A stretch of 64,000 nt of DNA from NCBI GenBank assembly GCA_020184695.1, contig JAANOX010000238.1, positions 186,001 to 250,000 on the forward strand, given 5' to 3'. Each line of letters opens with the position of its first letter. Positions within the stretch are counted from its first letter, which is position 1. Position numbers and translations under genes: made by a program. Positions 10,870 to 49,759 of the stretch are shown one piece after another. The notes beneath the pieces were generated by a model that was given only the letters and a program-made list of their open reading frames with translations, was not told where the DNA came from and made no database searches. This stretch comes from Histomonas meleagridis 2922-C6/04-290x (lineage: Eukaryota > Protista > Parabasalia).

Positions 10870-11211
10870 TTAATAAATTAATAATAATTCTAACATAAAA
10901 TATTCTGGTTCAATTTCTTTACCATTCATTTCTTTAAACCATATTTTAAAATTTGGTTTTCTACTTTTATATTCATATTTCTTATATTTAGTTCTATTTT
11001 CATTCGTATAAATACAAAAATAATCTTCATAATGATCACGTTCAATGAAATCAGCATGCATTGAAACATCAGATACTAAATAATCCTTAAATTTACACTT
11101 ACATTGTTGTACTACTATATATCTAGGATTTTGAGAATCCACAAATTCAGGCGGAAAACGGTTTTCTTTTTGGGAAGTACAAAAATACGTTTTAATCACT
11201 GGTTTAAGCAT
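10870..11211 (-). CDS. Small beta-rich viral protein, possible minor capsid/penton-like
   Basis: 113 aa; C-terminus KIWFKEMNGKEIEPEYFMLELLLIY resembles the terminal strands of single jelly-roll minor capsids; a homologous relic lies at 19636-19790. Confidence 0.4.
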   Translation of the reverse strand: MLKPVIKTYFCTSQKENRFPPEFVDSQNPRYIVVQQCKCKFKDYLVSDVSMHADFIERDHYEDYFCIYTNENRTKYKKYEYKSRKPNFKIWFKEMNGKEIEPEYFMLELLLIY

Positions 11212-11348
11212 TTATAAAAATAAAGGTTGTGATGAGACCAAACAATAACCGTCGCTTTTTGACTACTAACCTCCGATCAAAGATAAATTAAATAGGATAA
11301 ATGTCCGACCAAAGATAATCGGGGACAATTCGTGTTGGTAATGTGATG

Positions 11349-11405
11349 TTTTTGATAGGTTTATGCGAAAAGTGGTGCTAAAAGTGCTATCGTTCCTATC
11401 AAAAA
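11349..11405. promoter_or_regulatory. Conserved non-coding inverted repeat at the virus right end
   Basis: TTTTTGATAGG (11349-11359) and CCTATCAAAAA (11395-11405); homologous pair at 19410-19465. Function unknown. Confidence 0.5.
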
Positions 11406-11463
11406 GTTTCGCGTTCGATCAAAATTGAATGTGTATTCAAATTTTCAGACTAATTGTATGGCT

Positions 11464-11549
11464 TACAAAAATCATTTTGATTTTTGTAGCGAGCGGAGCG
11501 AGCACACTCTGGGGATTGGAGGGGTCTGAGGCCTCCAATCCCCCGAGTG
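11464..11549. repeat. Two adjacent hairpins flanking a GAGC-like repeat
   Basis: TACAAAAATCA-ttt-TGATTTTTGTA (11464-11488, perfect 11 bp); GCGAGCGGAGCGAGC; CACTCTGGGGATTGGAGG-9 nt-CCTCCAATCCCCCGAGTG (11505-11549, 18 bp with one mismatch). Confidence 0.85.
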
Positions 11550-11898
11550 AAAACTTAAGGTCGGGACTGATCACGAGGACCCTAGGGGCCCCGCCCCCCA
11601 GTACACTATATACTGATCACCTGTCTACGCCTATTTATAAAAAAAGTGCTCCGCGGAGTCGGGCTACGGCAGGTTTGTGATAAATGCACTCATTCGCCAT
11701 TAGGGCTCTCTTTGGGGGAGGGGGTACCTTGGTTTAAAGAAAAAGAAAAAAAGAAAAAAGTTCTCAATTGCCCATAGAGTGAACAAACTTTGTTATTATC
11801 ACTTATGTGCTGAGTCGAAAAGAGAAAAAAATTAACCAGAAAAACCGATAGAAAAAAGAAAATATCTTAAAATCAATTGAATGGTTTAATTTTTACAA

Positions 11899-12544
11899 TT
11901 AAAAATTAAATAAATAATTAGAATTAGGAACATATATATTACTAGGTGCAGCAACACTAAAATTAGTATCTTGTGAAATAAATATAATAGAATTAGTAGT
12001 AGTTGCAAATGATACAATACAATCATCATTGTCTGGTTGAGTTGTATCAAAATCATATAAATATATATAAATAATAATACATAGGACCTGCTTGAGATAC
12101 TTGACCTTGTTTAATAAAATTAACACGTATAAGAGTATAAATATCATTAGGAGAATTGGGTTGGATACAAATAAAGACATAATAATGAGTACCATCGAAT
12201 GTCTGATTTAAACCATTAGAATAAGTAAATTGAGTTAAGGGAATAACATTAGAATTATCAGAACCAATAATAACTGATGAAATTGGTATAAATACCTTAA
12301 TAGTAGATCCAATTTCATATGCAACACGTTTAGTACTAGTACCACCAGGATAATAAACAATGTCTTCTTGAATAGTATAATCAGGAATTTTACCATTGTT
12401 CTTAAGAACATCGTATGCTCTATCTAAATCATACTTAGTCATAGGAGGATTAAGAGGGGGCACCAACTTACGTTGTAACACACGTCCCTTATTACGTGAA
12501 TAATAAGATTCACTAATAGGTCCAATGCGATGAGGATCAAACAT
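11899..12544 (-). pseudogene. CRESS-virus accessory ORF downstream of capsid, frameshifted
   Basis: ORF 12053-12544 (MFDPHRIGPISESYYSRNKGR...) continues in another frame (YDFDTTQPDNDD...NYLFNF*) after a TA-run near 12060. Confidence 0.5.
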
Positions 12545-12570
12545 AAAAATAACAGTGGGAAAATTTTTTA

Positions 12571-13082
12571 TTAATAAGTGATAGCATAATTTAATTGAAC
12601 CCCTAAGAATTTATCATCAATAACAGTGCCGGGCATAGAATCTTTAAACATAAAGCGATATCATCACCAGAATTCAAATTACGTGCTAAGCGAGTACGAA
12701 ATACTTGAGTTTGCTGGGCATTGGGAGTAAGGTACCCTGACATAATAACATTTCGATTAGGTTTATATAATGATACAGGGGCAGCAGGGGTACCAAGTGA
12801 CATCGGTTGTACAGCAGTACCATCAGGAACATAAACTAGAGCTTATAATATCGGTATATCAACATCAGTAATCATTTTTAAAGTAAAATTCTTTACTTTA
12901 CGCATACATTGAGTAGCAACGGCACTAATCAAGGTTGTATTTACTTGATCACCAACAGCAGAATCTCCAGAACCGGTATTGAATGTGATATTCCCAGAAC
13001 AGTTGAAAGTCTCATTAGAATACTTTACAGTCTTCAATGGACGTCCACGTGAATAACTACGTCTACGTAACCTACGAGGCAT
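12571..13082 (-). pseudogene. CRESS-DNA virus capsid protein
   Basis: MPRRLRRRSYSRGRPLKTVKYSNETF...MRKVKNFTL...PIL*ALVYVPDG...LYKPNRNVIMSG...FRTRLARNLNSGD; after a frameshift ...GVQLNYAITY*. About 170 aa, with one in-frame TAA (12843-12845). Confidence 0.8.
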
Positions 13083-13095
13083 AACAATAAAAAAT

Positions 13096-13455
13096 TTAAT
13101 GTTGTGGGAGATTTATTAATTGAGGGTGAATAAGATATGAAGGAACATCCTTACGGCGACGATCATAACGGATGGCACCTATCGAGACTATTGGAAGTAC
13201 AATAACCCAATTCTCAACCAACTGAGGATTCTCCTTAATAAAGCCCTTAAGTAGGTCAACGTTGCTGAAATATATGGATTTAACTTGACCTTCATTGTCC
13301 GGCATAAGGCATGGAGCAGGGGGAGTAAAAACTGGTGGAGGGATCTGATACGGTTTTTCATCGTCTTCCGAATGTATTGATTCAGGACAAACATTAGAAA
13401 AATCAAAATCATTGTCGCTAAAGCCAAAATTTTCAAAAGAATCATCATATTCCAT
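13096..13455 (-). CDS. CRESS-virus accessory ORF upstream of capsid
   Basis: 119-aa intact ORF with acidic N-terminus and Pro-rich centre; ends 13 nt before the capsid ATG. Confidence 0.55.
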   Translation of the reverse strand: MEYDDSFENFGFSDNDFDFSNVCPESIHSEDDEKPYQIPPPVFTPPAPCLMPDNEGQVKSIYFSNVDLLKGFIKENPQLVENWVIVLPIVSIGAIRYDRRRKDVPSYLIHPQLINLPQH

Positions 13456-13609
13456 TGGACAAAAAAATAAAAATGATATTCCCGCATAGTGTCAAGTAGG
13501 AACTTGCTTGTGACATTTGATATGAAATATCTTTGATATTTATCATTATCAATTGAATACTTTATTTAAAATAGTGGTGGCATTAATAAATTTAGATAAA
13601 AATGCCAAA

Positions 13610-14311
13610 TTATCGAAATAAATGCCAAAATATGTCAGGACCCTCAATCATACCTGTATTGATTATGCAATCATTAATGTATACATCAGAGTTGACATTA
13701 CTCTGGATAGCAATTAATGGTGTTTTGTACTCATAGTTGATTCCACCAAACATTAAAACTTTGGGGGTGAACTTTCTATGATGATTAATAATATCATCAC
13801 AGTCTTCCCCTCGCCTTCTCCAAAGCCACCTATGGCTATCGCTTAAATAAATATAAGATTCATCAACAAACAATACTTTTTTCCAATCAGTTTAATTTTG
13901 GATATGAAATTGAGCAAAATTTATTCGATCTTGCTTTTGAGAATCAGTTAGAAAAAAGGTATTGCGAAGTGGAAGATAGCCGAATTATTGGCTCTTCCGA
14001 ATGTTGTATACAGTCCCATGGCTAATAGGACTTGTTTCTGAAAGGATATTGGAAATTGTTCTTGTTCCCCCCATTCTTCTATTATTTAGCGTCATGCTGT
14101 TGACTCTATCGATAGTGGCATCATTTACAATAGATGGTCTTCCAATTGCAGTAAATACAGTTTTATTGTTTGAATCATTTCTAACTTTTCTCACAAATTT
14201 TCGACAATGCCCAGTTTCCCTGAAAATTTGAGTATTGTTTTTTCCTTGGGATATCAGCTGAATGATTTCCAAACGATTCTTCATCATAGATTCTGACATC
14301 TTGTATTCCAT
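13610..14311 (-). mobile_element. Tc1/mariner (IS630-Tc1) transposase relic
   Basis: N-terminal HTH with GRP motif, QKQDRINFAQFH, DWKKVLFVDESY (first catalytic D), KVLMFGGI; in-frame stops; truncated before the second D. Confidence 0.8.
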
Positions 14312-14710
14312 GATTTATAAAATAAACGGTACCCTTTCAAATTGGTGGAACAACCTTTTTGATCGAGCTTTAGAAAGTCAACAATTCTTATATAAAAATT
14401 TGATTATTTCTAATATACAAAATAATATATAATGGAATAAATAAAACTTTTAAAATCATGTGCGTGAACCAATTTTATATGAAGATATATTTGTTTTATT
14501 TATAAATGTCAAATCTTTAAATAAAAATTTTTGTCTTATAAAGATATAAGAATATTATCTACTGTTATTATTAATCTTTGCTATATATATTATAAGGATT
14601 AATATAATGAAAACAACGAGATAATTATATTCTATTTGGTGTCAAACGACCGTTCAGAGAATAGGATCCGTTTGTTTCATTTTTTTATAGCTTTTATTAC
14701 GCTAAAGCAC

Positions 14711-17060
14711 ATGCTTAATGATGATACTGCCATAAACACAGGAGATAAATAATTGGGTGATCTGTCAACTAGCTTGAAATTCCTAATCGAGCTTGAGAAA
14801 ACTATATTCGGTTTAACCGAAGAAAACTGCGAGGCATCAGTTAAAAAAATATTGGAATTATTCGATTCAAATTTTCCAAATACATTTAATTTTATCATAA
14901 TAAACATAATTTATAATGCATTTTCGTCAAGAAAACAAGTATTCGATATTAACTTAAATTTTTTAAAGACACTTCAAATGAAAGAAGAAGAAATTAATCA
15001 AAATATCGTTAAATTAATACCAATTTTTATCAAACGTATATCTACAACAAACACACAAGAATCATATTATTTAATCGTACAAATGATTAAACAAAATTTA
15101 ATTGATAAAAATATCACAAAAAATATTAATTCAAAATATTTTTCTCATTATAAAACAAAAGAAGAAAACCAAAGCCAAAATCATTTTGTATTTGGGTCTA
15201 ATGGAAATGATACAGTAGAAAAATCCTTTATGGATCATTATGAAGAACTTTCAGAGAATGATTGGGAACTTCATAATAAATATATTAAAGAAGGAGTTAA
15301 TCTGAATGAAATTGCAAAAATAATTCGAAATGATGAAATAGAAAAACTTCAAGAAATATCATCACAAGCAAACTTTGATTTTAATCAGACAATTGAACCA
15401 TCACTTTATGAAAGATGTTCATTTATTAATCAAAAGAATGTTACATTAATTGATTATTCAGCATTTTTTTCTTCTATTAAATGTTTTAAATATTTACTTA
15501 TGAATGGTGCAAAAGTAGAAAACACAGGTAAATATGCAGTTGCAGGTGGAAATGAAGAAATCATTCATTTGTGTGAACAAAATCATTCGACATTTGAAGA
15601 TGCATATGAAGCTGCAATTGAATTTCATCAAAATGATATATTTAAATATATTTATTAAAATAAATTAGAAAAAACACAATCAATTCCAAAAATGTCTAAA
15701 GTCACACATTAAAAAAGATAATTATGAAATTTTAGCATTTTTGGTAGATAAAGGAGTTAATGTTAATGCTGATAATATAAACGAATCAGCAATAAAGATG
15801 GAAATTTATATCTCGTTAAATACTTCCTTCAAAATAACCAAATTCCGGAAAATATTTTTCCATTTGCTTCAGAATCAGAAAATATTGAACTTGTGAAATA
15901 TGTTTTAGAACAAAAAGGAATTGATGTTAATGCAAAAACCATTCATTTGAATAATTTTGGATTTATTTTTATAATTTATAACATGTTTTAATAATTTGAA
16001 ATATGTTTTAATAATTTGAAATATGTTCTAATAATTTATAATATGTTTTAATAATTTATAATATGTTTTAATAATTTATAATATGTTTTAATAATTTTGG
16101 ATATGTTTAAATAATTTGAAACAGCACTTCATATAGCAGTTAGAAACAATAATATAGAAATAGTAAAATTACTTTTAGATAAAGGAATTGATGTGAATGC
16201 AAAAACTATTCATTTGAATAATTTGATATATGTTTTAATAATTTATAATATGTTTTAATAATTTATAATATGTTTTAATAATTTGGAATATGTTTTAATA
16301 ATTTTGGATATGTTTAAATAATTTGAAACAGCACTTCATATAGCAGTTAAAAATAATAATATAGAAATAGTAAAATTACTTTTAGATAAAGAAGGAATTG
16401 ATGTTAATGCAAAAAATATTTATTTGAATAATTTGATATATGTTTTAATAATTTGAAACAGTACTTCATATAACAGTCAAAAACAACAATAGAGAAATAG
16501 TGAAATTACTTTTAGATAAAGGAATTGATGTTAATGCAAAATATATTCATTTGAATAATTTTATATATGTTTTAATAATTTGAAATATGTTTTAATAATT
16601 TATAATATGTTTTAATAATTTATAATATGTTTTAATAATTTATAATATGTTTTAATAATTTATAATATGTTTTAATAATTTTGGATATGTTTAAATAATT
16701 TGAAACAGCACTTCATATAGCAGTTAGAAACAATAATATAGAAATAGTAAAATTACTTTTAGATAAAGGAATTGATGTTAATGCAAAATATATTCATTTG
16801 AATAATTTTATATATGTTTTAATAATTTGGAATATGTTTTAATAATTTGGAATATGTTTTAATAATTTGAAACAGCACTTCAAATTGCACAATAATTAGG
16901 TTACATAGAAATAATAAATTTACTCCTTGAAAAAAGTACAAACGAAAATTCTAATTCAGATTCCTCTTCTACAAATATCAAATCTTCACTTTCAAGAAAT
17001 AGAAATGAAGCGTATATTGCTAATAATCAAAATCAACTCAAAGATGTAATGTTCGTATAA
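14711..17060 (+). pseudogene. DUF3447-type ankyrin-repeat gene, disrupted, with repeat inserts
   Basis: ATG 14711, in-frame TAA at 14750-14752 and 15656-15658; IIRNDEIEKLQ...TLIDYSAFFSSIKCFKYLL...AVAGGNEEIIHLC; then five TALHIAVxNNNIEIVKLLLDKGIDVNAK-type ankyrin units. Confidence 0.8.
15951..16871 (+). repeat. 20-nt tandem unit (ATAATTTATAATATGTTTTA) arrays inside ankyrin linkers
   Basis: Five arrays of 8, 5, 1, 7 and 3 units, each between GCAAAA..ATTYATTTGA and ATAATTTGAAACAG(C/T)ACTT. Confidence 0.9.
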
Positions 17061-18232
17061 AACAATCGAAATCATTGTCTCAAAACAAAAGTTGATATTA
17101 ACATACAAACATATGAAAATCATCAAAATAGCAATATACATTATCCATTTTACCTATTAAAAAACGTGTTGGCAAAGCAAAATTTAAATACATAAATACA
17201 ATAATATTATAAATTACACTATAAGAAAAACTTCAAAAAATTGTTGGAAACAACATGATGATATCATACAGCATTTCTATAAGAATCTATTCGATTTCAT
17301 TGATTTTTACATCTACAATTGTTCTAGCTGAGCTAGCCAAAGTCCGGCCTTCTTTCATTAAAGCAACAAATTCATGCAATCCGTACTCCTCGTTTTCCAA
17401 GGTCTACATTTCATACATTAAATTTATGAACAAATTTCTTCGTATATTTCAAAAAGAATAAACAAAGAAAAAAATATTTTCAATGACCAAAAGCAAAAAT
17501 TAAGAAACAAATATTTTTATCAACCGAAGATCTTCTGAAAATTCTTGCTTCTATTCGAATAATAAATGCATCAACGAGTTCCCAATTTGCAATGATTGTT
17601 ATATACTTTTAAAATCAATTAAAGCAAATAAGAAACATTAAAAAGCACATTTTAATTATGTATCAAAAACAAAAAATAAAACATTCTAAAAAAATAAAAT
17701 CATATAAACAAGAAATTTTCACATTAAAAAATGATATCAGTTTACTTCAAAAGAATAATCAAATTACTAAAGAAATTATATTCCATAAAATTAAATAAAA
17801 TAACAATGTTAGTTTTTGCGTTCAAATTTTTTGAAACTATTACCACTAAAAAAATAAGTTTATGCCAAATTAGAGTATATAAATAAAAAATATTATTAAG
17901 TTTTCATCTGATGGTATCAAAAGATTTCATAAATTCAAAAATTTTAATGTGATCATCCCTTTTAATTATATATTTTACATCATCTGACTGATTTTTTGCG
18001 AGAATACCCCTACGATGTTATAAAAATATTACGTACTTGCGATTATTAAGAAGAAAAAATTATTAAAATTTTTTCCCTCTTATTTTTGTTTTTTAATACT
18101 TCATAAGATCATTATTTTGGATATTTTGAATGCAATATGATCGTTATAGAACTGAGCTCGGTCATAAAATTTGAATATATTGATAAATAAAACAAATGAA
18201 ACACAAAACACATCCAATTTTAGATCTATTTT

Positions 18233-19207
18233 TTATTCAAAGTAGATATTCCACGCATCTATAATAGAAGAATCATGGATTTGGTTCCACGATTTGATCA
18301 TGTCTTGACAAGCATTCAGCTCAACAACTAGCCCTTTTGATTCTTTTACCCTTAGGCGATGATATCTTTTGGCATGCGCTTTGACTATACCAAATATTTT
18401 TCGATCCAAAAGTTGAAAAGCATCTGTCGTTCCCGGTGGGATAAAGCGCCAATAAGGACTTATGTCACCGATCTGCGAATCTTCAACTCTCTCAGTTTTA
18501 CAACGCCCTACGAACATTAATGGTAGTTTCTGCCCGTCTGCAGTTATACTTGCCAAAACAGTGATGTTGTCTTTTTCCTTTTTACGAATTAAAGTTTTAA
18601 TATTGTCTTCCCCAATTATAGCCCAGGTTAATAAACTTTTGGGATAAAGGCAATAAGAAGTTTCGTCGCAATTGATTATTCGATAAATGTGGTACAGTTG
18701 TTAACAAATTAGTAATTTCATTTATCCACATTATTTTTTGTTCTGTTGTGACATTTGGTCTTCTTTTATAATGAAACTTCTTAGATGTGAATTTATGTTG
18801 TTTTTAAAATCAGAAATAAACCCATTTGAACAATTAAACTGTTTAATATTTTCATGTATGCTCATATAAAATTCTATAGCTATTTCTTTAATATCATCGT
18901 TAGTAAAGAGATTTCCTTCATCAATAACACTAGATATATAATCAGCTAACTCATTTTCTTCGTCTTCAGTAAAAATTCTTCTATCTTGGTTTTTGTAATT
19001 ATTTTGAGGTGACGAGTAAGGGTCATTTCTGTAGCAATTTCTCCAGGTATAAAGTGTTAACTTTGGAATATATGTTCGAATACTAATTGATGGTATTTTC
19101 TTCTCATTTTGGAACTCTTGACCAATTAGCATCCATATATCGTTTGTAATAAGACAGTGATGATTTCGATAAGGGTTTCTGAAATAAAGCTTTAATAATC
19201 TTTTCAT
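18233..19207 (-). mobile_element. Pogo/Tc5-like (CENP-B HTH + DDE_1) transposase relic
   Basis: IFTEDEENEL...FNCSNGFISDFK (HTH), IINCDETS, ITVLASITADGQKLP, IPPGTTDAFQLLDRKIFG; stops and an internal deletion. Confidence 0.8.
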
Positions 19208-19404
19208 AATTTTTTCATTGTTTTTGTCATAATGGTAATTACCATTGAAAACAAAAAGATTTAACTCAAATTTAATAATGTTTACAAAAGTTATAGTTTA
19301 ATGAAGTATTTGAATATGGTAAAAAATTACGAAATGGAGCGACTGATAAATAATTGTTGTGAGTCATTTCGGAATGTTGTTCGTTTGAAATATTGAATAA
19401 TTGG

Positions 19405-20022
19405 GAAACTTTTTGATAACAGTGATAGCACTTTTATGTCGCTTTTCATATAAACTTATCAAAAACATTGCCTAACCAGCACAAATTGTCTTTTCACCTG
19501 ACCATTTATTTTATTCAATATTTCATTAGTGTGTCCACTACAATAAAAATTCTAGAGCGATCGAATACTTCATAGTATAGAAAAAGTTCAAACGCTCAAA
19601 TACCATTGACAAAAAATTTTAATTGATTTTTTTTGATGAACGAACCAGTAACTAAAACATATTTTTGTACTTTTGTAAAAGAAAGAAAACCGTTCACCTC
19701 TCGAATTTGTTGATTTCCAAAATTCTAGATATATTGTTGTTCGACAATGTAAATGTAAGTTCAAAGATTATTTAGTGTCTGATGTTTCAATCATATCAAT
19801 GTTTATTTAATAACCATCTTTGGTTCCATTGGCATGATATTTCAATTAGTTATGTAAATCTAATGTGAAATAAGTATCACAACAAATGAATAATTGAGGA
19901 GGTGGTGGATGATTTCCAGCATTATCTACATTATAATAAGTATCATTAGCTTGTGTATGAATTGGTTGTCCTTTAATTTGCATTGGTATATTTTGACCAT
20001 TAGAATCTAAACCATCATAACC
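19405..20022. mobile_element. Inverted, internally deleted relic of a related Maverick-like virus
   Basis: 19405-19490 resembles the reverse complement of about 11320-11412; 19636-19790 encodes MNEPVTKTYFCT...RYIVVRQCKCKFKDYLVSDVS (homologue of 10870-11211); 19807-20022 on the minus strand encodes the capsid C-terminus (GYDGLDSNGQNIP...HPPPPQLFIC). Confidence 0.85.
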
Positions 20023-22126
20023 AACACATTCAAGAGGTACTTCAACTCTAAATTCCTCAATAGTTTTTCGTTGAAAATCAAAATATATGGGCAACTTCGG
20101 GTGTTTAGTATAAATATAAATTTTTGAGCAATTTCGACTGCTGAATTTTGAGATCTCGATCTGATCAATTTTTCTCTTTTTTCTAAAATCCTTCAAAATA
20201 ATAAAACCCTTCAATGTCTCCAATGTAAATATCAAAAAATTTGCTTGATTGTTATTCAATATTTGGAGAAAAAGTGAAAATACGTGAAAAAATTAAACAT
20301 TTAAATGTTAATTCGGATGAATTCTAATATATCGAGTAGCGACGTGATTTTATTTTATATATATTAATATAAGTGATATTTTTTTCATAAATACATATTT
20401 TTGAGTATTATTTAAATTGTTAAGAATGAGAAATTTTTGTTTCAAAATAAGGTTAAGTGACAAATTAAGGTATGATTTTATCTATTTTTTTTATGCAATG
20501 TTATTATAAATTGCATTGCATAATAATAATTTACTTTTCTATTTCTTTGAAATGCCTAGGTATTTTTGTTAAATCTCAGATGAGATGATGAAAACAAACT
20601 CTTTTTCGATTTTTCATTATTTCTATAAATTCTTCGATAAATATCTTCTAAATCCAATTATATTAATTATTCAAGTAAGTAAAATTGAATTTTATGTCTT
20701 ATTAAAATATATTGGCATAATCCAAATATATTATCATTTTTAATTTTGTTATAACATTGCGCGGTTATATAACCCGCCCCTGTTTCTTCCTGTTTGCCGA
20801 CCAATTAATGATAGAAATAAACATAAAAAACATAAAATTAATATATTTTTATGTACATAAAATTGAGTACTTTCCTCGAAATAATCTATTCTAGTAAATG
20901 TATGTAATATATATTTAATATATATCAAATTATATAAATAAATTTACCAATTCCATTTTCAAGAAAATTTAAATATGATACAAAAAGGTATCGTCTTTAT
21001 CAAAAAGTCATCATTTTTTGAGTTTTCAAAATGGAGTGTTATTTAACAAAACACTTAAAAAAAAAGCACAAATTCAAAAAAACTAGCAGTTGAATTCAAA
21101 TAAAAATCTAAGCATAAATAGAAGACTTATAATATTTTAATTTTTGCTTGGTCACATTAAAAATCTATTAACGAATTTTTATTATCGGTCAAATATTTTT
21201 TTAAAAAATGAACAATTTTTTATAAAAAATTAAAAAATGAAAATTTCTCGGCAAAAGTTTGTTTATAAAATCATTTATATTTAATTTTCATCATATTGTG
21301 TTATAATCAAATTGAAAAAATGTTCAAAAAAAACATAAAATATGTCTGATCATTTATTATTTTTATCGATAAAAATAAAAATTCATTATTTTCTAATATA
21401 TAATACGATGACATAAAAGAATTTGATTGTTTTGGTTGTTGTATTATTATTTTTATTATTTATTGCAAAAAATGAATATTTTGAAAATTATGTCACTTTT
21501 TTGATAATAAAATTTTTTTATTTTCATTTTTCAATTAAATTTATTTATATAATTCATAAAACAAGGATTCTAAGTTGTGCTAAAAATAAATATCTAAAAT
21601 AAACCAGGTCGCCACTTTATATAATTTTTTGCATCAATTTTTAAAAAAATGGGAGAAAAAAATGAAAAATTTGAATGAATTTTATTTCCTGGTAGGTTTC
21701 AGGTTCTCAAATCAATACAATATAAAATTCACCATAAATTAATTATGAATGACTGGAAAATATAAATCTTTTAAAAAAATTGATTTAAAAAATATATTCC
21801 ATGAGTTTATAAATTTTTTCGATTTAAAATAAAATTATTGTATAAATCATGGAATGCTTACATATGGAATGAAGAAAGAAGATAAAAAATCTGTTTTTTG
21901 GGAGTTGAAGTACCTCTTTTCAAACAAAAAATAACTTTTGAGTTAAATATCTTATGTCAAATTTTTTTGAATGTGAGAGGTACATTCATAATGTTATTTA
22001 TTAATGTTCTAAACGTAAGCTATTCACTTCAGTTAATCTCCATCCGGATTTTAACTGCAGATGCAACTGAATTTTAACCCCCTGAAGAAACACAGACGTT
22101 TAAATTTAATCGGTGTTTAAATTGAA

Positions 22127-22591
22127 TTGAATTTGGCTGTTTGCTTTTTCCTTTTGAGTTTAATTTTTGCCACCAAAACCATGCAAGTTGAAAGTAATGA
22201 CATAGTCGAAATACGCAGCCTTTTCTCTGATATCGAAAAGGAAATAGAAATGTATGAACAGGAAAAAAAAGATAAAATTCAGCAACAATTAATCATTGAG
22301 TATCGATCCGTTTTAAAAGATATATTTAAAGATCAAACAATAGAATCGCTTACTGTAAATGAAGGCGAAAATGAAATAATTCAAAGAATTTGTCAAATTG
22401 TAAAAAAGTGGAAAAAGAAACCCGGAAATATTCCCGAGCTTCGCTTTAAAGCAATTAAACTTTCACAAGAACTAGGCCTCAAGATTACAACAGCAACAAG
22501 AAATCACAGAGAAACACTATTAAAGTGGTACCAACTTTACTGGGATGAAATTATTCCTTTCTTGGATAAAGTGGAAAAAACAGATGAATAA
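22127..22591 (+). CDS. Hypothetical protein (small parabasalid-type family, ...RNHRETLLKWYQLYWDEI...)
   Basis: Intact ORF; the true ATG is probably 22181 (MQVESN). Confidence 0.55.
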   Translation: MNLAVCFFLLSLIFATKTMQVESNDIVEIRSLFSDIEKEIEMYEQEKKDKIQQQLIIEYRSVLKDIFKDQTIESLTVNEGENEIIQRICQIVKKWKKKPGNIPELRFKAIKLSQELGLKITTATRNHRETLLKWYQLYWDEIIPFLDKVEKTDE

Positions 22592-44300: not shown

Positions 44301-44928
44301 TACATCGATACGATTACTTAAACCAGGTACACGTGATGACTTATTAGGATTTTATTCATTTATAAGTGACGCATATAACCAATTTACACATCCATCATTA
44401 GGAGCGTTATTAAATTCGATGCGTGTCGTAGGGAATATGATTGCATTCATATGGTGTTTAGATAATCATATACCATATAAAGGGAATACTTCATTAATAT
44501 CACCATTCTTTAATGTGCTGAGTGAAATGTTAAGTAATACAAAGGATTTGTTCATACAAGAAGGTCTGAATCTGGATGAAGAAAATACACATTTGAACTA
44601 CACGTTTAGTATCATATGGTCTGTGTTGGAATTCATCATATGTTCGCCAGGTACAATTAAATTGGGTGAGAATGACGTGCAGTTAATGAATAGATTCGGT
44701 GATGGCCCAATATTTTGTGCTCATACGTTAATTACAATTTGTAACCAACAAAAATATTACGAATTTTATTCTTTGTGCTCAAGAGTAATGATGTTGTCAA
44801 AGGCTGAAAATACAAAAATGGAACAAACAGAGTTGGAGGAGTTCTTGAAGAAGGCAAAGGTGGTGAAGCAAATAAAGTTGTTCGCAAATGTAGTGGCAGG
44901 ACCGTTCTCTATGCAAAATAATAAGTAA
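41395..44928 (+). CDS. CYFIP/Sra1/PIR121 family (WAVE complex subunit)
   Basis: AVRFNYTKDDLNALIEVIGYIK, LGSLWFREVFL...QFPVRSSLPFILVEHLL, FEIYNDAA..AL..FKSRYLFDEVQAEVSLC, FGDG. Confidence 0.88.
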   Translation: MPSDNDDFVPQKDSRTRSNSLTKVNSMNQDDFKRKKPEKPPEQSPSPKPKQGRSRTTAPKAQEVGPILHFDNDGKDDGFSNIFASKEPCVIPPVIQLLYSPSTEIGRLDVPIDKLDCFDQIKDINEIISLTKIAKDYIPFLYSYRSIMKAINSDNLPPDQRLIDTSMSDKTKSGPITKIFRETFKGTIERLWNLKEFCTQISETIKKMFLSIQYEPSDVFFRYLTDLFDVVFNIDYLKLVKTGFLNDLAFVKRDTEQDEETKDKIFNLQPWVPSPYSTLSSIRDAINNELDKSKPKQSKYLHVFSKYLKYCVSFFSGKYVLPQEKNALIIGMISTIYIQSNPKNPQYDIFAQADLSQVYSIIEGNPIIPLYGENSFAPGYILAGIQGFKAEETNIATTAEKLKSKETRCLLKYRLNEFQEKYRTLLQITTSLVKDEPATTQDLLQLLQGIAEMSIAITRQSAFKSIVVAQVSDESIKKFDRAVRFNYTKDDLNALIEVIGYIKTLSCAIIKAEEKIVDYANTTVNRGIQQFIQNEIEQQLVRAIAAKDKTSINILRQLRDALGHWGNNDPNQKLASKSSKIVSHKIDDSNATVTINQIDIVRIEAIKFITKDSPFMKKISTFTPAHIRSKDVEEYQKFINGSNEWYYLIKYIDLVKESTNLGSLWFREVFLDMDKVLQFPVRSSLPFILVEHLLTTDNPSLHDSMLFAFEIYNDAAFTALNTFKSRYLFDEVQAEVSLCVDMIAFTFSETFYKSCREIAAQMELPNEYVSKNTLQPMRYNIILRQNRLEILGAAVDFNQIATGKLNQKMRKELESYIELLTDFRLAPYVAHLIKVAKTTHELLLQYHLQMDPFDTIWQRACQFTQPLVLQSRLSTLCIDSFDFDHMVFNVLSQRFIFSKSININPVTLESWAKEYVQIHTHETNYVGQEHFEALVYLLSPGELSILVQRLMLTFQEEVMQMFTNYSHVATSIRLLKPGTRDDLLGFYSFISDAYNQFTHPSLGALLNSMRVVGNMIAFIWCLDNHIPYKGNTSLISPFFNVLSEMLSNTKDLFIQEGLNLDEENTHLNYTFSIIWSVLEFIICSPGTIKLGENDVQLMNRFGDGPIFCAHTLITICNQQKYYEFYSLCSRVMMLSKAENTKMEQTELEEFLKKAKVVKQIKLFANVVAGPFSMQNNK

Positions 44929-44988
44929 AAATCTTTAAATATGAAATGTAATGAATTTGTTTGTAAATTATGAAACATAACGTGAAAA

Positions 44989-45905
44989 ATGAATGTGTTT
45001 ATATATGAAGTGATGAAACAATGTAAATGTATTTGATGAATGTGTTTATATATGAAGTGATGAAACAATGTAAATGTATTTAATGAATGTGTTTATATAT
45101 GAAGTGATGAAACAATGTAAATGTATTTGATGAATGTGTTTATATATGAAGTGATGAAACAATGTAAATGTATTTGATGAATGTGTTTATATATGAAGTG
45201 ATGAAACAATGTAAATATATTTGATGAATGTGTTTATATATGAAGTGATGAAACAATGTAAATGTATTTGATGAATGTGTTTATATATGAAGTGATGAAA
45301 CAATGTAAATGTATTTGATGAATGTGTTTATATATGAAGTGATGAAACAATGTAAATATATTTGATGAATGTGTTTTATATATGAAGTGATGAAACAATG
45401 TAAATGTATTTAATGAATGTGTTTATATATGAAGTGATGAAACAATGTAAATGTATTTGATGAATGTGTTTATATATGAAGTGATGAAACAATGTAAATG
45501 TATTTGATGAATGTGTTTATATATGAAGTGATGAAACAATGTAAATGTATTTGATGAATGTGTTTATATATGAAGTGATGAAACAATGTAAAATGTATTT
45601 AATGAATGTGTTTATATATGAAGTGATGAAACAATGTAAATGTATTTAATGAATGTGTTTATATATGAAGTGATGAAACAATGTAAATGTATTTGATGAA
45701 TGTGTTTATATATGAAGTGATGAAACAATGTAAATGTATTTGATGAATGTGTTTATATATGAAGTGATGAAACAATGTAAATGTATTTGATGAATGTGTT
45801 TATATATGAAGTGATGAAACAATGTAAATGTATTTAATGAATGTGTTTATATATGAAGTGATGAAACAATGTAAATGTATTTGATGAATGTGTATAAGTA
45901 TGAAG
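44989..45905 (+). repeat. 47-nt minisatellite, about 19.5 copies
   Basis: Unit ATGAATGTGTTTATATATGAAGTGATGAAACAATGTAAATGTATTTG, head-to-tail with no spacers; two units carry a 1-nt insertion. Confidence 0.97.
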
Positions 45906-46024
45906 TGTTACAAAGCGGACAAATTTTTCGTGTCCAACGGTCAAATTTTTGTGGCCTGCACTGTATTTACTGAAAATATAATAGCGACGATTACAAAATT
46001 ATTAAGAAAGTATTTTTATTATAT

Positions 46025-48283
46025 CTAATAATCAGCCTCGTAATCATAATATGGGGAATTATTCGGGAATGTCATATTTAACTCATTACCCATATTAATA
46101 TCCGATGCCGCGGTATGAATTCTACCCAAAACATTATCTACTTTTCTACCGAAAGGCTTTGATATCAGAGATACCACTTTCACGATCAAAGGTCTGCACG
46201 GTATTCTCACTAATTTCGATAAGTCATTAACTATTACTTCTATGAAAGACAAATCCAAATTTCCGACTTCAGCAATTTGTGAAATTAAAACATTTCCATT
46301 TTCTGCGTCGCTTTTTATTGCGTTACAAATATCGAACACTAATTTTAATGGTAAAATATCATTAACATTTACGCTTATAGTTTGTGGTTGTCTTGTTTCG
46401 ATTACAATCGAATCAATTACATTACCTAATGATACTATATCTAATTTACAAAATTTTTCGAGTGATGTTAATAAGTCACAAAACTCTTTCGGTAATGCAT
46501 CGAGGACATTTCTAAGAGATGTTTCTTTCGTCATTTCATTTAATGGATCAAGCATCATAAAGAATGCTTCTCCAAGTTTATCATTAATTACATTTAATAC
46601 ATCAGAAAGTTTAAAATCGGATTTAATAATGTTTCCTATTTCGTTAATTCCTTTTGTTAATATGTTATATGTGTTACCAAGTTTTAATGAGTTAAATATT
46701 GGTGCTAATAAATTAATAATTGGTGGTATTGCTTGGCCAACAAGATGTACAATCATGTCGATTGCTTTACTATTTATTATATATAAATTCGCAAATTCGG
46801 TGGTCTCATGAATTGTGTTCTGTAAATACGTTGTTAAAGTTTGATCTTTAAGTCCTGCAATAACATCATGGAAACTTTTAATGTTATTAAATGATGCTTC
46901 ACTATAATTAATCATTTTAGTATTGATAGAATAATTTGTGAGATTTTGTATCATTGTGACGTTTTCTTTAGTAATTGTGTTATTAAGATTTCGTACTATG
47001 AAATAATCCTCGATTGGAATAGTCTTGTCTGAAAGATCTTTAATTGTTTCACATAAAATTCGATAATATAATGCGCCTTCGAGAGTGGCATTGAAATATT
47101 GTGCTAATGAAAAAATGTCTTTAAGATTGGTAGAAAGGGTATATCGCTCGGCTGCATCAATTACTTCTTGACAGCCTTGAGCTATTTGTATAAGTGTTTC
47201 ATTTTTAACAAAATTGGCACAAATTTGAAAAACATCAAACGTATCGTTAACCGTTGATGTACAGTAGTCAATTGCTGTTAGATAAAAAGTGACATTAGTT
47301 TCATCTAATCCAAATGAATCAACTAAAAGAGTTTTAAGATTAGGATGCCCAGTAGCAAGTTCCTTGGCAAGTGGAATGATGTACTTTTCGGCATCTTCTT
47401 TATATGTAGTCCAACCACAGAGAGTAACAAGAAATGAATAGAGATTACTTCTTTCTGTCATATTAAGAACTCTATTACCAAAATCTTCAAGATGATGCAT
47501 ACGGCCTTCAAGAGGAGAACTATTGAAATCAAAGATCTTAGAAAATGGTCCTTTGAGAATTCCCCATAAATCTGATATAAGATTAAGAGCAATAGCAAGA
47601 AGATCAACAACACCTAATAGACCGTGAAGAATTTGGTTTCCAAAAATACTTGCATTCATATTGTTATCATTATTGGCTGTTGATAAAGCATACGAATATT
47701 CATAAAGATCTAAGTAGTTTTGGATACACTTCTCAGCACCAAGGAATTCATATATTTGCGGCCATGTTATTTTTGTTTTAGATAATAAATTTATTACAAT
47801 TTTGTACACACCTGAAAGTGGAGCTGCATCAATACCAAGAGACTGTATAAGATCTTGAAGTGAAATTTGGTTTGACATGGTGATGTTGTCAATTGCTTTT
47901 TTAAATGAATCCCAATATGATACATTCCAATTCAAAAGACCGAAAAAGTCATATCCAATTTCGATGATTGGATAAATCATTGTGTCTTTAAAACCAATTA
48001 ATCCAACTGTAAGAAGATAAGATTTTTCTTCAATTGTTTGAGGAAGAATTCCTAAAACTTGTGTAATCATTTGGTTGTCTATAATATTAATAAGGGTTGA
48101 TACGTCAAAATCAGGCGCAATTGTATTAGTAAAATTCTCAAATTTTAATTGAAAATCTTCTAAACCAGCAGCCTTGAAAAATTCTCCTACAGTGTACTCT
48201 TTTCCTGATAGGCGGATCAGAACATCGAATATATTTTCTTTGGCTAAAGAAGGAAAACAAAATATGGAAAAAAGAAGAAGCAT
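46025..48283 (-). CDS. Hypothetical secreted/surface protein
   Basis: Signal-peptide-like MLLLFSIFCFPSLA; about 750 aa intact, helical, many N-x-S/T sites. Confidence 0.7.
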   Translation of the reverse strand: MLLLFSIFCFPSLAKENIFDVLIRLSGKEYTVGEFFKAAGLEDFQLKFENFTNTIAPDFDVSTLINIIDNQMITQVLGILPQTIEEKSYLLTVGLIGFKDTMIYPIIEIGYDFFGLLNWNVSYWDSFKKAIDNITMSNQISLQDLIQSLGIDAAPLSGVYKIVINLLSKTKITWPQIYEFLGAEKCIQNYLDLYEYSYALSTANNDNNMNASIFGNQILHGLLGVVDLLAIALNLISDLWGILKGPFSKIFDFNSSPLEGRMHHLEDFGNRVLNMTERSNLYSFLVTLCGWTTYKEDAEKYIIPLAKELATGHPNLKTLLVDSFGLDETNVTFYLTAIDYCTSTVNDTFDVFQICANFVKNETLIQIAQGCQEVIDAAERYTLSTNLKDIFSLAQYFNATLEGALYYRILCETIKDLSDKTIPIEDYFIVRNLNNTITKENVTMIQNLTNYSINTKMINYSEASFNNIKSFHDVIAGLKDQTLTTYLQNTIHETTEFANLYIINSKAIDMIVHLVGQAIPPIINLLAPIFNSLKLGNTYNILTKGINEIGNIIKSDFKLSDVLNVINDKLGEAFFMMLDPLNEMTKETSLRNVLDALPKEFCDLLTSLEKFCKLDIVSLGNVIDSIVIETRQPQTISVNVNDILPLKLVFDICNAIKSDAENGNVLISQIAEVGNLDLSFIEVIVNDLSKLVRIPCRPLIVKVVSLISKPFGRKVDNVLGRIHTAASDINMGNELNMTFPNNSPYYDYEADY

Positions 48284-49759
48284 CCTTCTTACCAATGAAC
48301 TCGATCAGATCGCTATTCAAAATTCAGTGTAAACACCCATCAGTATGATGAGAATTTGGATCATATTTGAAATAAACGTTCGTGCGGTTATTCTGCGAAT
48401 TGAGAAGGGGTGCCTCACCGAAAGCTGGAATGCACATATATTAAAACAGGAGATAAATTTATCATTCAGCCATGGTTCCGTAATTAAAGTACCGTTAAAC
48501 TTTTGGATGAATTGTTATCGTACAAGCAATCATATAACTATTACTACATTTAATAATAATAATATTTCTAATTTATTAAATTTTAATAGTTATATATTTA
48601 GCAATATAAATAATAATAATATACCAAAGTTAATGCTTATTCAATCATCTTCATCAAATTCGGTGAAATTAGGATTTGTAATATTTCCATCAAATAAGAA
48701 AAGTTTGATACAAATATATTATAAAATAATTAATCGTTAAAGGTTCAAGATATCCAATCTCAATACCGTTAAAACCAAATGAAATTGGACTTAATAAATT
48801 ATACACAATCGAATTCATGAATACAAAATTTATTTAAATAAAAATGATGAAGATGAAACTTTCGATGATAAAAAACAAAATTTGTTATATAACTTAAGTC
48901 GTAATTTAATGAAAAATGAATTAACAAAAGAAGAAAATATTAAAATTATTAAACATATTTACCAATATCCAAATTATGCAAAATATTGTCGAACAATTAT
49001 ATTAAAATCATTGAATGATAATAATAAAAATAAGATAATAAATGATTGGCGCGATGCTTAAATTGAAGTAGTGAAAGAGAAAAAAAAAATAAATGATTGG
49101 AACACATTGTGGAGAGATGTTATGGTACTGCCTGATGAAAAAAGAAGTCGTAACAGAAAATATTAGAAAATTACAGCCGGTGATAGAATGAGAATTTGCT
49201 ATTGTAAATGCTTTCCTTTGATAATGAAATATTTTGTAAAAAAATGAATAAACAGAAAAATAATAAATTTGTTATCGATATGCAGAAAGATAAAATTTGA
49301 TTTAATTTGTTGATAATGAAAATATTTTATTGAGAATAAAAAAATAATTTGTTATCTAAATGATACCTCATAGCTGCACCTATAAGTACAAATGGTTGGA
49401 AATAACTTATTTTTGAAGAGGGAAGAAGATGAATGGATATATAAAATTATACTGTTTTCGATAATATTGAAAATATACAATATTGGAATTAAAGGATTTT
49501 CTTCTCATAATAAATATTTTTCTTCATATAATTTGAACACTGGGGTTCTGACATTAGATATACTTTATCACTCTTTATCGAATTATATGTAGAGCAAAGT
49601 TTTCTTTTGCTTTCACTTTTAAATACAAATAAAAGTCATGAATTTTATTATTTACATGTAATTGCTATTGGAAAACTTGTTTATTCAATTAAAAAATCTA
49701 CTCATTTACTTCAAATAATCGAGCATCTTATGATGAAATTCCTGATGTTATACTTTTCA

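What the first reader, a model, noticed from the sequence alone, without database searches (positions are those of the whole stretch)
11460..13460. Rep-less ssDNA (CRESS) virus capsid cassette abutting the dsDNA virus end
Seen: ORF - capsid - ORF - structured intergenic region, about 2 kb, starting within about 50 nt of the conserved end module of the Maverick-like element; no Rep motifs found nearby. Known: CRESS viruses have no integrase, and Kirkoviridae have been linked to parabasalid hosts. Inference: either a helper-dependent segment or satellite captured by or integrated alongside the Maverick-like virus (an ssDNA/dsDNA virus partnership), or a chance insertion into a silent region with Rep lost.
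Basis: partly seen in the sequence, partly recalled or inferred. Interest (0 to 1): 0.85.

Follow-up and report, generated by a model that had tools for sequence, protein, structure and literature searches.

The report
Decayed kirkovirus-like insert in Histomonas genome
The "Rep-less capsid cassette" is a decayed piece of a small circular DNA virus (kirkovirus-like) fossilised in the Histomonas meleagridis genome, a class of insert already published for this genome; it looks Rep-less and end-joined to a larger virus-like element only because that 12-kb element later inserted into the fossil.

Summary
The window is Histomonas meleagridis JAANOX010000238.1:186001-250000. Bases 11590-13631 are an endogenous cressdnavirus fragment: conserved non-coding block Y, ORF3 (broken), Cap (broken) and ORF1 (open), in the gene order of free relatives. 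Cap is real: named Po-Circo-like and Histomonas Cap relatives, and a jelly-roll model matching CRESS capsids.

The satellite/partnership reading fails.
- Seven of eight related virus contigs carry Rep beside these genes, including one with overlapping ends (3281-nt circle); the eighth is an incomplete contig.
- Sibling inserts in the same genome hold Rep contiguously, one as a >1-unit tandem copy with all four ORFs open.
- The "structured intergenic region" (11427-11588) is the right terminal inverted repeat of an 11.9-kb element whose left repeat lies just outside the window.
- That element's two flanks are contiguous in intact copies, so it inserted into an existing insert. A Rep fragment and the likely origin hairpin lie on its far side.
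- Two other Rep-less Cap fragments sit far from any such element.

The neighbour encodes an A32-like packaging ATPase but shows no polymerase or integrase, so "Maverick-like" is only partly supported. Kinsella et al. 2022 already reported 104 Rep-like and 41 Cap-like inserts in these assemblies. Low interest.

The parts
11590..11885 (.). Block Y: conserved non-coding region of the cressdnavirus genome, lying 3' of ORF3. It begins with a C-run followed by an AGTACAC motif. This is the left boundary of the viral insert.
   Evidence: It is 81-88% identical to the same block in L006, L008, L012 and the metagenomic contig L004. Its folding energy is not unusual (z = -1.1).
11902..12544 (-). ORF3, a conserved kirkovirus-like protein of about 210 aa and unknown role. 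Broken: 3 frameshifting and 2 in-frame indels against the intact L008 copy.
   Evidence: Relatives of 190-230 aa all begin at residue 1. tblastn outer bounds come and break counts.
12574..13082 (-). Cap, a capsid protein of about 170 aa with an arginine-rich N-terminus. Broken: 1 frameshift and 1 premature stop.
   Evidence: Named relatives include 'Cap protein [Histomonas meleagridis]' and 'Capsid protein, Po-Circo-like virus'. The window's pieces are 97% and 80% identical to the intact P0140. The P0140 model (pLDDT 83) is a single jelly roll matching CRESS capsids in BFVD (TM up to 0.83) and nanovirus, STNV and PCV2 capsids in PDB.
13096..13455 (-). ORF1, 119 aa, open, function unknown. It is the first gene of the ORF1-Cap-ORF3 module.
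   Evidence: It is 91% identical at protein level to L008 ORF1 with no breaks. Against L008, pN/pS is 0.14. It is 49% identical to ORF1 of contig L004.
13456..13631 (.). Part of the ORF1-Rep intergenic region. Viral homology stops at about 13631, some 50 nt short of where the Rep start codon lies in intact copies. This is the right boundary of the insert.
   Evidence: Matches to L007 330-822 and to window coordinates -2910..-2802 end here. No Rep remnant is found further right.
11217..11589 (.). Right terminal inverted repeat of the 11.9-kb neighbour element, including the GC-rich hairpin at 11505-11549. This is the 'structured intergenic region' of the finding.
   Evidence: It is an inverted copy of L012 12405-12818 (window coordinates -352..61) at 84.6% over 415 nt. 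Folding z = -6.6 for 11427-11588.
1..11589 (.). Window part of an 11.9-kb virus-like element bounded by terminal inverted repeats; its left end is at window coordinate -352. It is inserted into the viral insert between segments X and Y.
   Evidence: The repeat pair is shown. The flanks are contiguous in intact viral copies. At least 7 genes are shared with the 12,073-nt metagenomic contig L013. Pfam found no polymerase, integrase or capsid.
5385..6177 (+). Packaging-ATPase gene (A32-like, FtsK-HerA type) of the 11.9-kb element. It is split into at least two pieces, whereas relatives are single proteins of about 267 aa. Breaks were not counted.
   Evidence: Relatives are 60-75% identical and the piece mapping is. 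The model of P0260 (pLDDT 84) matches A32-like packaging ATPases of medusavirus, mavirus and Sputnik in BFVD (E down to 2e-11, TM 0.5-0.6).
13610..14311 (-). Remnant of a Tc1/mariner-type transposase (HTH plus the start of the DDE domain), abutting the right boundary of the viral insert.
   Evidence: Weak Pfam hits, below the curated cut-offs: HTH_29 (E = 2e-4) and DDE_3 (E = 0.011). Relatives lie next to other inserts in L006.
19405..20016 (.). Internally deleted, inverted remnant of the same element family. It matches window 11060-11410 and 3254-3472.

Best explanation
Bases 11590-13631 are a non-functional endogenous viral element: a partial copy of a kirkovirus-like cressdnavirus genome of about 3.4 kb, fixed in the Histomonas meleagridis chromosome.

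**Genome layout.** The free virus is a circle carrying Rep on one strand and ORF1-Cap-ORF3 on the other. Two non-coding segments lie between the 3' ends: X, which holds a strong hairpin with a 12-nt loop and is the likely origin of replication, and Y.

**What is shown.**
- The window's copy keeps Y-ORF3-Cap-ORF1 and stops about 50 nt before the Rep start, where a Tc1/mariner remnant begins.
- On its left, an 11.9-kb virus-like element with terminal inverted repeats, encoding an A32-like packaging ATPase, inserted into the viral DNA in the C-run at the X|Y boundary.
- That insertion separated the cassette from X and from a Rep fragment, which now lie 12-14 kb away just outside the window.

**What is inferred.** The locus began as one or more head-to-tail viral copies, as seen intact in L008. 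It was later broken up by transposon and virus-like insertions, deletions and point decay.

The cassette does nothing today. It has no Rep and no origin hairpin, and Cap and ORF3 are broken.
For: **Source and assembly**
- The window matches JAANOX010000238.1 at 100%, and the second assembly at 99.9% across both junctions.

**The genes are viral**
- ORF3 relatives are 190-230 aa and start at residue 1.
- Cap has named Cap/Po-Circo-like relatives and a jelly-roll fold.

**Free relatives carry Rep**
- L005 has 30-nt overlapping ends (a 3281-nt circle) and holds Rep plus the three ORFs.
- L001 and L020-L024 all carry Rep.

**Sibling inserts carry Rep contiguously**
- L006 runs ORF3-part, Cap, ORF1, Rep, X, Y.
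- L008 is a >1-unit tandem copy with a 3366-nt period and all four ORFs open.

**The neighbour inserted into the virus**
- Viral homology begins where the neighbour's inverted repeat ends, at 11589/11590.
- The neighbour's left flank is X' and its right flank is Y. The two are adjacent in intact copies and overlap by a few bases of a C-run.
- Rep (P0107) and X' lie just left of the window.
- The origin-type hairpin is in X (z = -5.0).

**Decay and independent precedent**
- Rep-less Cap fragments occur elsewhere with no such neighbour (L017, L018).
- Kinsella et al. 2022 (PMC9615429) report 104 Rep-like and 41 Cap-like inserts in these two assemblies, with 102 Rep sequences placed in Kirkoviridae.
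Against: - The target-site duplication of the 11.9-kb element cannot be read cleanly: it falls in a C-run, and there is an extra 65 nt with a 32-nt inverted copy of the terminus at the left end.
- A second, unrelated 3.2-kb transposon carrying an rve gene sits within about 25 nt of the equivalent X|Y position in the neighbouring viral unit. That is an odd coincidence for random insertion.
- A copy of the same element family also abuts the insert in L006, at a different internal point. So 2 of 6 sampled loci show adjacency, and I could not test this genome-wide.
- The stretch between the left Rep fragment and X' (about 1.2 kb) is rearranged and not fully explained.
- Whether this exact locus is among the 41 published Cap-like inserts could not be checked, because no supplement is held.
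Confidence: 0.85

Rival explanations
1. The cassette is a helper-dependent Rep-less segment or satellite of an ssDNA virus, captured by or integrated alongside a Maverick-like dsDNA virus.
For: - The cassette lacks Rep and directly abuts the end of a virus-like element with terminal inverted repeats.
- The same element family abuts another insert in L006.
- A distant Cap relative (35% identity) does occur as what looks like a 795-nt Cap-only circle with an origin-type hairpin, L025.
- Two contigs of about 2 kb (L004 and the P0003 contig) show ORF1-Cap-ORF3 without Rep.
Against: - L004 has no overlapping ends, and it ends inside segment X, so it is an incomplete contig.
- Every relative with a contig of 2.3 kb or more and Cap identity of 40% or more carries Rep.
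- Sibling inserts in the same genome carry Rep contiguously.
- The cassette has no origin hairpin, and Cap and ORF3 are broken.
- The neighbour's flanks are contiguous viral sequence, so the neighbour inserted into the virus rather than capturing it.
- Metagenomic relatives of the neighbour carry no CRESS genes.
Confidence: 0.03
2. The order of events is reversed. The 11.9-kb element was resident first, and separate cressdnavirus DNAs were joined to each of its ends, for example linear replication intermediates ligated at a break. This would imply a real affinity between the two kinds of DNA.
For: - Viral sequence lies on both sides of the element, and both junctions fall near the origin region.
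- A second mobile element sits at almost the same viral position in the adjacent unit.
- Adjacency recurs in L006.
- The left end carries an odd extra inverted copy of the terminus.
Against: - The two flanks join into one continuous viral sequence with a short overlap, as expected for an insertion with a short target duplication.
- The junction lies about 100 nt away from the loop of the origin hairpin in X, not at a plausible nick site.
- In L006 the junction is at different points of both partners.
- L017 and L018 show no such neighbour.
Confidence: 0.08
3. The junction is an assembly artefact, or the viral sequence is contamination from an episomal virus.
For: The fullest copy (L008) lies at the very start of a contig as a >1-unit tandem copy with all ORFs open, which is the pattern an episome could produce.
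Against: - For the window locus, both assemblies agree at 99.9-100% over 14 kb spanning both junctions.
- The copy is decayed and is interrupted by host repeats.
- Kinsella et al. showed that insert-bearing scaffolds are homologous between the two assemblies.
Confidence: 0.01

Closest known systems
Kirkoviridae-type endogenous viral elements of Histomonas meleagridis (Kinsella et al. 2022, Virus Evolution 8:veac087, PMC9615429)
   Same: - Same genome assemblies.
- Same kind of sequence: Cap-like and Rep-like cressdnavirus fragments integrated in the chromosome and shared between the two assemblies.
- Cap relatives are annotated 'Cap protein [Histomonas meleagridis]'.
   Different: - The paper counts inserts and places Rep in a phylogeny. 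In the text I could read, it does not describe the ORF1-Cap-ORF3 module, the X/Y non-coding segments, tandem copies, or nesting with other mobile elements.
- I could not confirm that this exact locus is in their list.
Free kirkoviruses / Po-Circo-like and Bo-Circo-like viruses from animal faeces
   Same: - Cap is 44-47% identical to a UniRef 'Capsid protein, Po-Circo-like virus'.
- Rep of sibling copies has the Viral_Rep and helicase domains.
- The genomes are circular, 3.3-3.9 kb, with several extra ORFs.
   Different: The window copy is chromosomal, lacks Rep and the origin hairpin, and has broken genes. The Histomonas lineage has a unit of 3366 nt.
Geminivirus-related DNA in Nicotiana and other integrated ssDNA-virus tandem copies (from my own knowledge, not tested here)
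   Same: Partial and more-than-unit-length head-to-tail copies of a rolling-circle virus integrated in a host chromosome and then decaying, as in L008.
   Different: Different virus family and host. No junction at an origin nick site could be shown here.
Maverick/Polinton elements and polinton-like viruses (the neighbour, not the cassette)
   Same: - Terminal inverted repeats of about 0.4 kb.
- Size of 12 kb.
- An A32-like/FtsK-HerA packaging ATPase.
- A short target overlap is possible.
   Different: - No protein-primed polymerase, rve integrase, protease or recognisable major capsid protein was found.
- There is no room for a polymerase gene in the 11.9 kb.
- A metagenomic relative carries a mariner-type transposase instead.

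Membership tests
Kirkovirus-like cressdnavirus (endogenous copy) | Capsid protein homologous to kirkovirus / Po-Circo-like Cap | tested here: met
   More than 1150 relatives, including 'Capsid protein, Po-Circo-like virus' and 'Cap protein [Histomonas meleagridis]'. The window's pieces are 97% and 80% identical to the intact P0140.
Kirkovirus-like cressdnavirus (endogenous copy) | Single jelly-roll capsid fold | tested here: met
   The model of paralogue P0140 (pLDDT 83) matches CRESS capsids in BFVD (TM 0.63-0.83) and nanovirus, STNV and PCV2 capsids in PDB. The test was run on the intact paralogue, not on the broken window gene.
Kirkovirus-like cressdnavirus (endogenous copy) | Gene order ORF1-Cap-ORF3 shared with free circular genomes | tested here: met
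   Seen in L001, L004, L005 and the P0003 contig.
Kirkovirus-like cressdnavirus (endogenous copy) | Rep (HUH endonuclease plus SF3 helicase) contiguous with the structural genes and falling in the Kirkoviridae clade | tested here: not met
   No Rep remnant is in the cassette or elsewhere in the window. Rep is present in sibling copies L006, L007, L008 and L012. I did not redo the clade placement; it rests on Kinsella et al. 2022.
Kirkovirus-like cressdnavirus (endogenous copy) | Origin stem-loop | tested here: not met
   The strong hairpin with a 12-nt loop lies in segment X (L008, z = -5.0). In this locus X' is on the far side of the 11.9-kb element, outside the window. Calling this hairpin the origin is an inference.
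Rep-less satellite or segment of a multipartite ssDNA virus | Own origin hairpin on the Rep-less molecule | tested here: not met
Rep-less satellite or segment of a multipartite ssDNA virus | Closely related free Rep-less circles exist | tested here: not met
   None was found among contigs of close relatives. Only a distant 795-nt Cap-only repeat unit turned up (L025, 35% identity). The sampling is limited.
Rep-less satellite or segment of a multipartite ssDNA virus | Intact coding capacity | tested here: not met
   Cap has 2 breaks and ORF3 has 5 indel events, 3 of them frameshifting.
Maverick/Polinton (the neighbour) | Terminal inverted repeats | tested here: met
   415 nt at 84.6% identity, between window coordinates -352..61 and 11217-11589.
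Maverick/Polinton (the neighbour) | Target-site duplication of 5-6 bp | tested here: inconclusive
   The flanks overlap within a C-run. The exact length cannot be read, and the left end carries extra sequence.
Maverick/Polinton (the neighbour) | Protein-primed family B DNA polymerase and rve integrase | tested here: not met
   Pfam gives no hit on any ORF of 100 aa or more in the element, and the 11.9 kb has no room for a polymerase. The nearby rve gene belongs to a separate 3.2-kb transposon. Sensitivity is limited to Pfam profiles.
Maverick/Polinton (the neighbour) | A32-like/FtsK-HerA packaging ATPase | tested here: met
   The model of P0260 (75% identical to the window ORF) matches packaging ATPases of giant viruses and virophages.
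Maverick/Polinton (the neighbour) | Double jelly-roll major capsid protein | tested here: inconclusive
   Candidate broken ORFs within 1838-3292 give no Pfam or PDB sequence match.

The most novel reading that the evidence does not exclude
Kirkovirus-like inserts and this family of A32-ATPase virus-like elements are associated non-randomly in the Histomonas genome. One form of this would be that the region next to the viral origin is a preferred landing site for mobile elements: two different elements sit within about 25 nt of the same viral position in adjacent units. Another would be that the two kinds of viral DNA tend to integrate together. The same element family abuts 2 of 6 sampled insert loci, and a distant relative lies 2-5 kb from a third.
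Probability: 0.12. Interest if true: 0.55.

Novelty: already known. Interest (0 to 1): 0.22.

Why it matters
As a class, this is published evidence that kirkoviruses infect parabasalids, so the cassette adds no new kind of element.

What this locus adds is anatomical detail:
- A conserved ORF1-Cap-ORF3 module shared with free genomes.
- The position of the likely origin hairpin.
- Tandem, more-than-unit-length integration.
- A worked example of how nesting by a later virus-like insertion can make a viral fossil look like a Rep-less satellite joined to a dsDNA virus end.

It is a caution for scans that read one window. The missing Rep and origin lie just beyond the window edge, on the far side of the inserted element.

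Tried and rejected
**Searches that gave nothing**
- Pfam, PHROGs and PDB sequence searches on the cassette's ORF pieces gave no meaningful hit.
- An Rfam scan of 10500-14500 gave nothing relevant.
- An IMG/VR scan with the ORF3 piece found nothing.
- Pfam and PDB sequence searches on the neighbour's ORFs gave nothing.
- A profile of the ATPase family against PDB found nothing, and Pfam gave only weak P-loop hits (ATPase_2, Zot). Only the structure comparison was informative.
- The other half of the truncated Tc1/mariner remnant was not found nearby.
- The Kinsella supplement with insert coordinates is not held.

**Ideas considered and dropped**
- One long broken capsid gene spanning 11900-13080. 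Relatives show two separate genes, Cap and ORF3, each starting with its own methionine.
- The hairpin at 11505-11549 as the viral origin. It belongs to the neighbour's inverted repeat.
- The rve gene left of the window as the neighbour's integrase. It lies in a separate 3.2-kb transposon with its own short inverted ends.
- The 489-aa gene of contig L013 as a counterpart of a window gene. It has no match.

An early script printed per-segment match coordinates for the broken Cap and ORF3 genes. Both bracket the breaks approximately. From then on I printed only outer bounds and counts.
Full report
**1. Where the window comes from**

The window is AT-rich and intron-poor, with typical eukaryotic housekeeping genes and DUF3447/ankyrin genes. 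The 163-aa ORF of the finding occurs with the same sequence in two Histomonas meleagridis assemblies. Locus L010 (GCA_020184695.1, JAANOX010000238.1) equals window 22544..2053 at 100%, which places the window at 186001-250000 of that record. The second assembly (L009, WSYJ01000025.1) matches at 99.9% over window 8204-22544. Both junctions of the cassette are therefore reproduced in two assemblies, and misassembly is very unlikely.

**2. What the cassette is**

- **ORF3.** An exhaustive protein search with the 163-aa ORF found 16 relatives of 190-230 aa, all aligned from their first residue. It is a gene of its own, truncated at the C-terminus, and not the tail of one long capsid gene.
- **Relatives' contigs.** They show a fixed order of about 120 aa, about 165 aa and about 210 aa on one strand.
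  - L005 has a 30-nt terminal overlap, which gives a 3281-nt circle. It carries a 354-aa Rep (Viral_Rep plus helicase) on the other strand.
  - L001 carries Rep cut by the contig end.
  - L004 (2051 nt) lacks Rep but has no overlapping ends and stops inside the non-coding segment that leads to Rep.
- **Mapping on the window**:

| Gene | Window coordinates | Identity to the intact Histomonas copy in L008 |
|---|---|---|
| ORF1 | 13096-13455 | 91% |
| Cap | 12574-13082 | 87% |
| ORF3 | 11902-12544 | 68% |

- **State of the genes.** ORF1 has no break. Cap has 1 frameshift and 1 premature stop. ORF3 has 3 frameshifting and 2 in-frame indels.
- **The middle gene is the capsid.** It has more than 1150 relatives, including 'Cap protein [Histomonas meleagridis]' and 'Capsid protein, Po-Circo-like virus'. 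A confident model of the intact paralogue P0140 (pLDDT 83) is an eight- to nine-stranded jelly roll. It matches CRESS capsids in BFVD (TM up to 0.83) and nanovirus, STNV, PCV2 and geminivirus capsids in PDB.

**3. The boundaries, and what the 'structured region' really is**

Comparison with sibling copies shows that viral homology runs from 11589/11590 to about 13631.

- **Right boundary.** It lies in the ORF1-Rep intergenic region, about 50 nt before the point where Rep starts in L007 and L008. A Tc1/mariner-type remnant follows (weak HTH_29 and DDE_3 hits, below Pfam's cut-offs). No Rep remnant exists anywhere in the window.
- **Left boundary.** The GC-rich stretch 11427-11588, with the hairpin at 11505-11549, folds far better than shuffles (z = -6.6). 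It has no counterpart in any other viral copy.
- **Identity of that stretch.** 11217-11589 is an inverted copy (84.6% over 415 nt) of a stretch just left of the window, L012 12405-12818, which is window coordinates -352..61. It is the right terminal inverted repeat of an 11.9-kb element.
- **The true viral non-coding block.** Y (11590-11885) folds no better than chance (z = -1.1).

**4. The neighbour inserted into the virus**

- **Layout of intact copies.** In L006 and L008 the order is Rep, segment X (about 300 nt), block Y, then ORF3.
- **Layout in this locus.** X' lies at window coordinates -707..-448, immediately left of the element's left repeat. Y lies immediately right of the right repeat.
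- **Flank alignment.** Aligned to the intact sequence, the two flanks are contiguous and overlap by a few bases of a C-run just before the AGTACAC motif. So the 11.9-kb element is an insertion into pre-existing viral DNA.
- **Further left**:
  - a Rep fragment (P0107, 278 aa) at -2756..-1935;
  - a second Y plus the ORF3 C-terminal part at -3647..-2914;
  - a further Rep C-terminal fragment plus another X at -7392..-6898.
- **A second insertion.** A separate 3.2-kb transposon carrying an rve gene sits between that last X and the second Y, within about 25 nt of the equivalent position.
- **Overall picture.** The locus looks like a decayed multi-unit viral array broken up by later insertions and deletions. 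That it began as a head-to-tail array is an inference. L008 shows such an arrangement intact: a >1-unit tandem copy with a 3366-nt period and all four ORFs open.
- **Origin hairpin.** Segment X of L008 holds a strong extended hairpin with a 12-nt loop (z = -5.0). X' keeps it. I take this as the likely origin, and the window cassette does not contain it.

**5. Is the neighbour Maverick-like?**

- **For.** It has the terminal repeats and the right size. Its P-loop ORF (5385-5870, continued to 6177) belongs to a family of 267-aa proteins. The model of that family (pLDDT 84) matches A32-like/FtsK-HerA packaging ATPases of medusavirus, mavirus, Sputnik and others (E down to 2e-11, TM 0.5-0.6). At least seven of its genes are shared with a 12,073-nt metagenomic contig, L013.
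- **Against.** Pfam finds no protein-primed polymerase, integrase, protease or capsid. PDB sequence searches are blank. The ORF map leaves no room for a polymerase.
- **Verdict.** It is a virus-like element of the packaging-ATPase (polinton-like) kind. Membership in Maverick/Polinton proper is not shown.

**6. Is the adjacency special?**

I sampled six insert loci.

| Locus | Nearest copy of the 11.9-kb element family |
|---|---|
| Window locus | Abuts the insert at the element's terminus |
| L006 | Abuts the insert at an internal point of the element, in the opposite relative orientation |
| L008 | A distant relative of the element's fibre-like gene lies 2-5 kb away |
| L007 | None seen |
| L017 | None within 10 kb |
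| L018 | None within 10 kb |

- L017 and L018 are themselves Rep-less Cap fragments. L017 lies among host genes, and L018 is split by a mariner-like element.
- Mariner-type remnants flank most of the inserts.
- Metagenomic relatives of the neighbour carry no CRESS genes.
- This pattern fits co-residence and nesting in repeat-rich DNA. A real enrichment cannot be excluded without a genome-wide test.

**7. Age and origin of the copies**

ORF1 of the window and of L008 differ at 12% of bases, with pN/pS = 0.14. Most of that divergence therefore arose under selection, that is in replicating viruses, and points to separate integrations of different lineages. The element's two inverted repeats differ by 15%, and the two Y blocks of the locus differ by 19%. 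All the events here are old.

**8. Comparison with what is known**

- Kinsella et al. 2022 (PMC9615429) report 145 cressdnavirus inserts in exactly these two assemblies: 104 Rep-like and 41 Cap-like, with 102 Rep sequences in Kirkoviridae. They used them to confirm parabasalids as kirkovirus hosts.
- The cassette is thus a member of a published set. I could not check the coordinate list.
- Papers on Po-Circo-like viruses state that no typical Cap is expressed. The named UniRef entry and the fold result here say otherwise.

**9. Verdict**

The satellite/partnership interpretation is not supported, and simple truncation plus nesting explains the locus. Novelty: already known. Interest is low.

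A script printed per-segment match coordinates for the two broken genes. Both bracket the breaks approximately. Afterwards I printed only outer bounds and counts.

Noticed in passing
L008:1-4700 (GCA_020186115.1, WSYJ01000160.1, start of contig): A more-than-unit-length head-to-tail copy of the kirkovirus-like genome with a 3366-nt period. All four ORFs are open: Rep 319 aa, ORF1 119 aa, Cap 170 aa, ORF3 210 aa. It lies at the very start of a contig, so a recent integration or an episomal form joined on during assembly cannot be told apart here.
   Followed up: partly
L025 (IMGVR_UViG_3300022239_000001), whole contig: Six head-to-tail copies of a 795-nt unit. Each holds only a Cap-like ORF (35% identical to the Histomonas Cap) and a 12-bp stem with a 12-nt loop. 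The contig has a 227-nt terminal overlap. It looks like a Cap-only mini-circle, either a segment of a multipartite virus or a satellite, and is only distantly related to the window's lineage.
   Followed up: partly
L012:5890-9098 (window coordinates about -6870..-3660, left of the window): A 3.2-kb transposon with an rve-domain gene and short inverted ends. It is inserted at an AT-rich site within about 25 nt of the position where the 11.9-kb element sits in the next viral unit. Two different mobile elements at nearly the same viral position is unexplained.
   Followed up: partly
L012:12361-12436 (window coordinates about -396..-321): Just outside the left inverted repeat of the 11.9-kb element there is an extra 32-nt inverted copy of the element's terminal sequence. 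It forms a hairpin with the true terminus around a 13-nt loop. The origin is unknown; a fold-back or end-to-end junction remnant is possible.
   Followed up: no
window 4574-4859 and L012:11237-11519 (window coordinates -1520..-1238): A 286-nt inverted pair at 97% identity, much younger than its surroundings. It straddles the left end of the 11.9-kb element and segment X', so it cannot be the two ends of a simple nested insertion.
   Followed up: no
window 15941-16884; also 44837-46078: Two long tandem-repeat arrays. The first has a 20-nt period and lies just right of a DUF3447/ankyrin-type ORF (14753-15658), which has a paralogue at 49607-50491. The second has a 47-nt period and very strong G-over-C skew.
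   Followed up: no
window 9549-10849 (minus strand); L006:4357-6268; L008:6328-10044: The neighbour element and its relatives encode proteins with a repeated short histidine- and asparagine-rich motif, reminiscent of fibre or spike proteins. Pfam gives no match. Copies are 46-93% identical across the loci.
   Followed up: partly
L009 versus window 6689-8193: The two Histomonas assemblies differ inside the 11.9-kb element by a local rearrangement with about 170 extra bases. It turns two window ORFs (142 and 277 aa) into one called gene of 489 aa in the other assembly.
   Followed up: no
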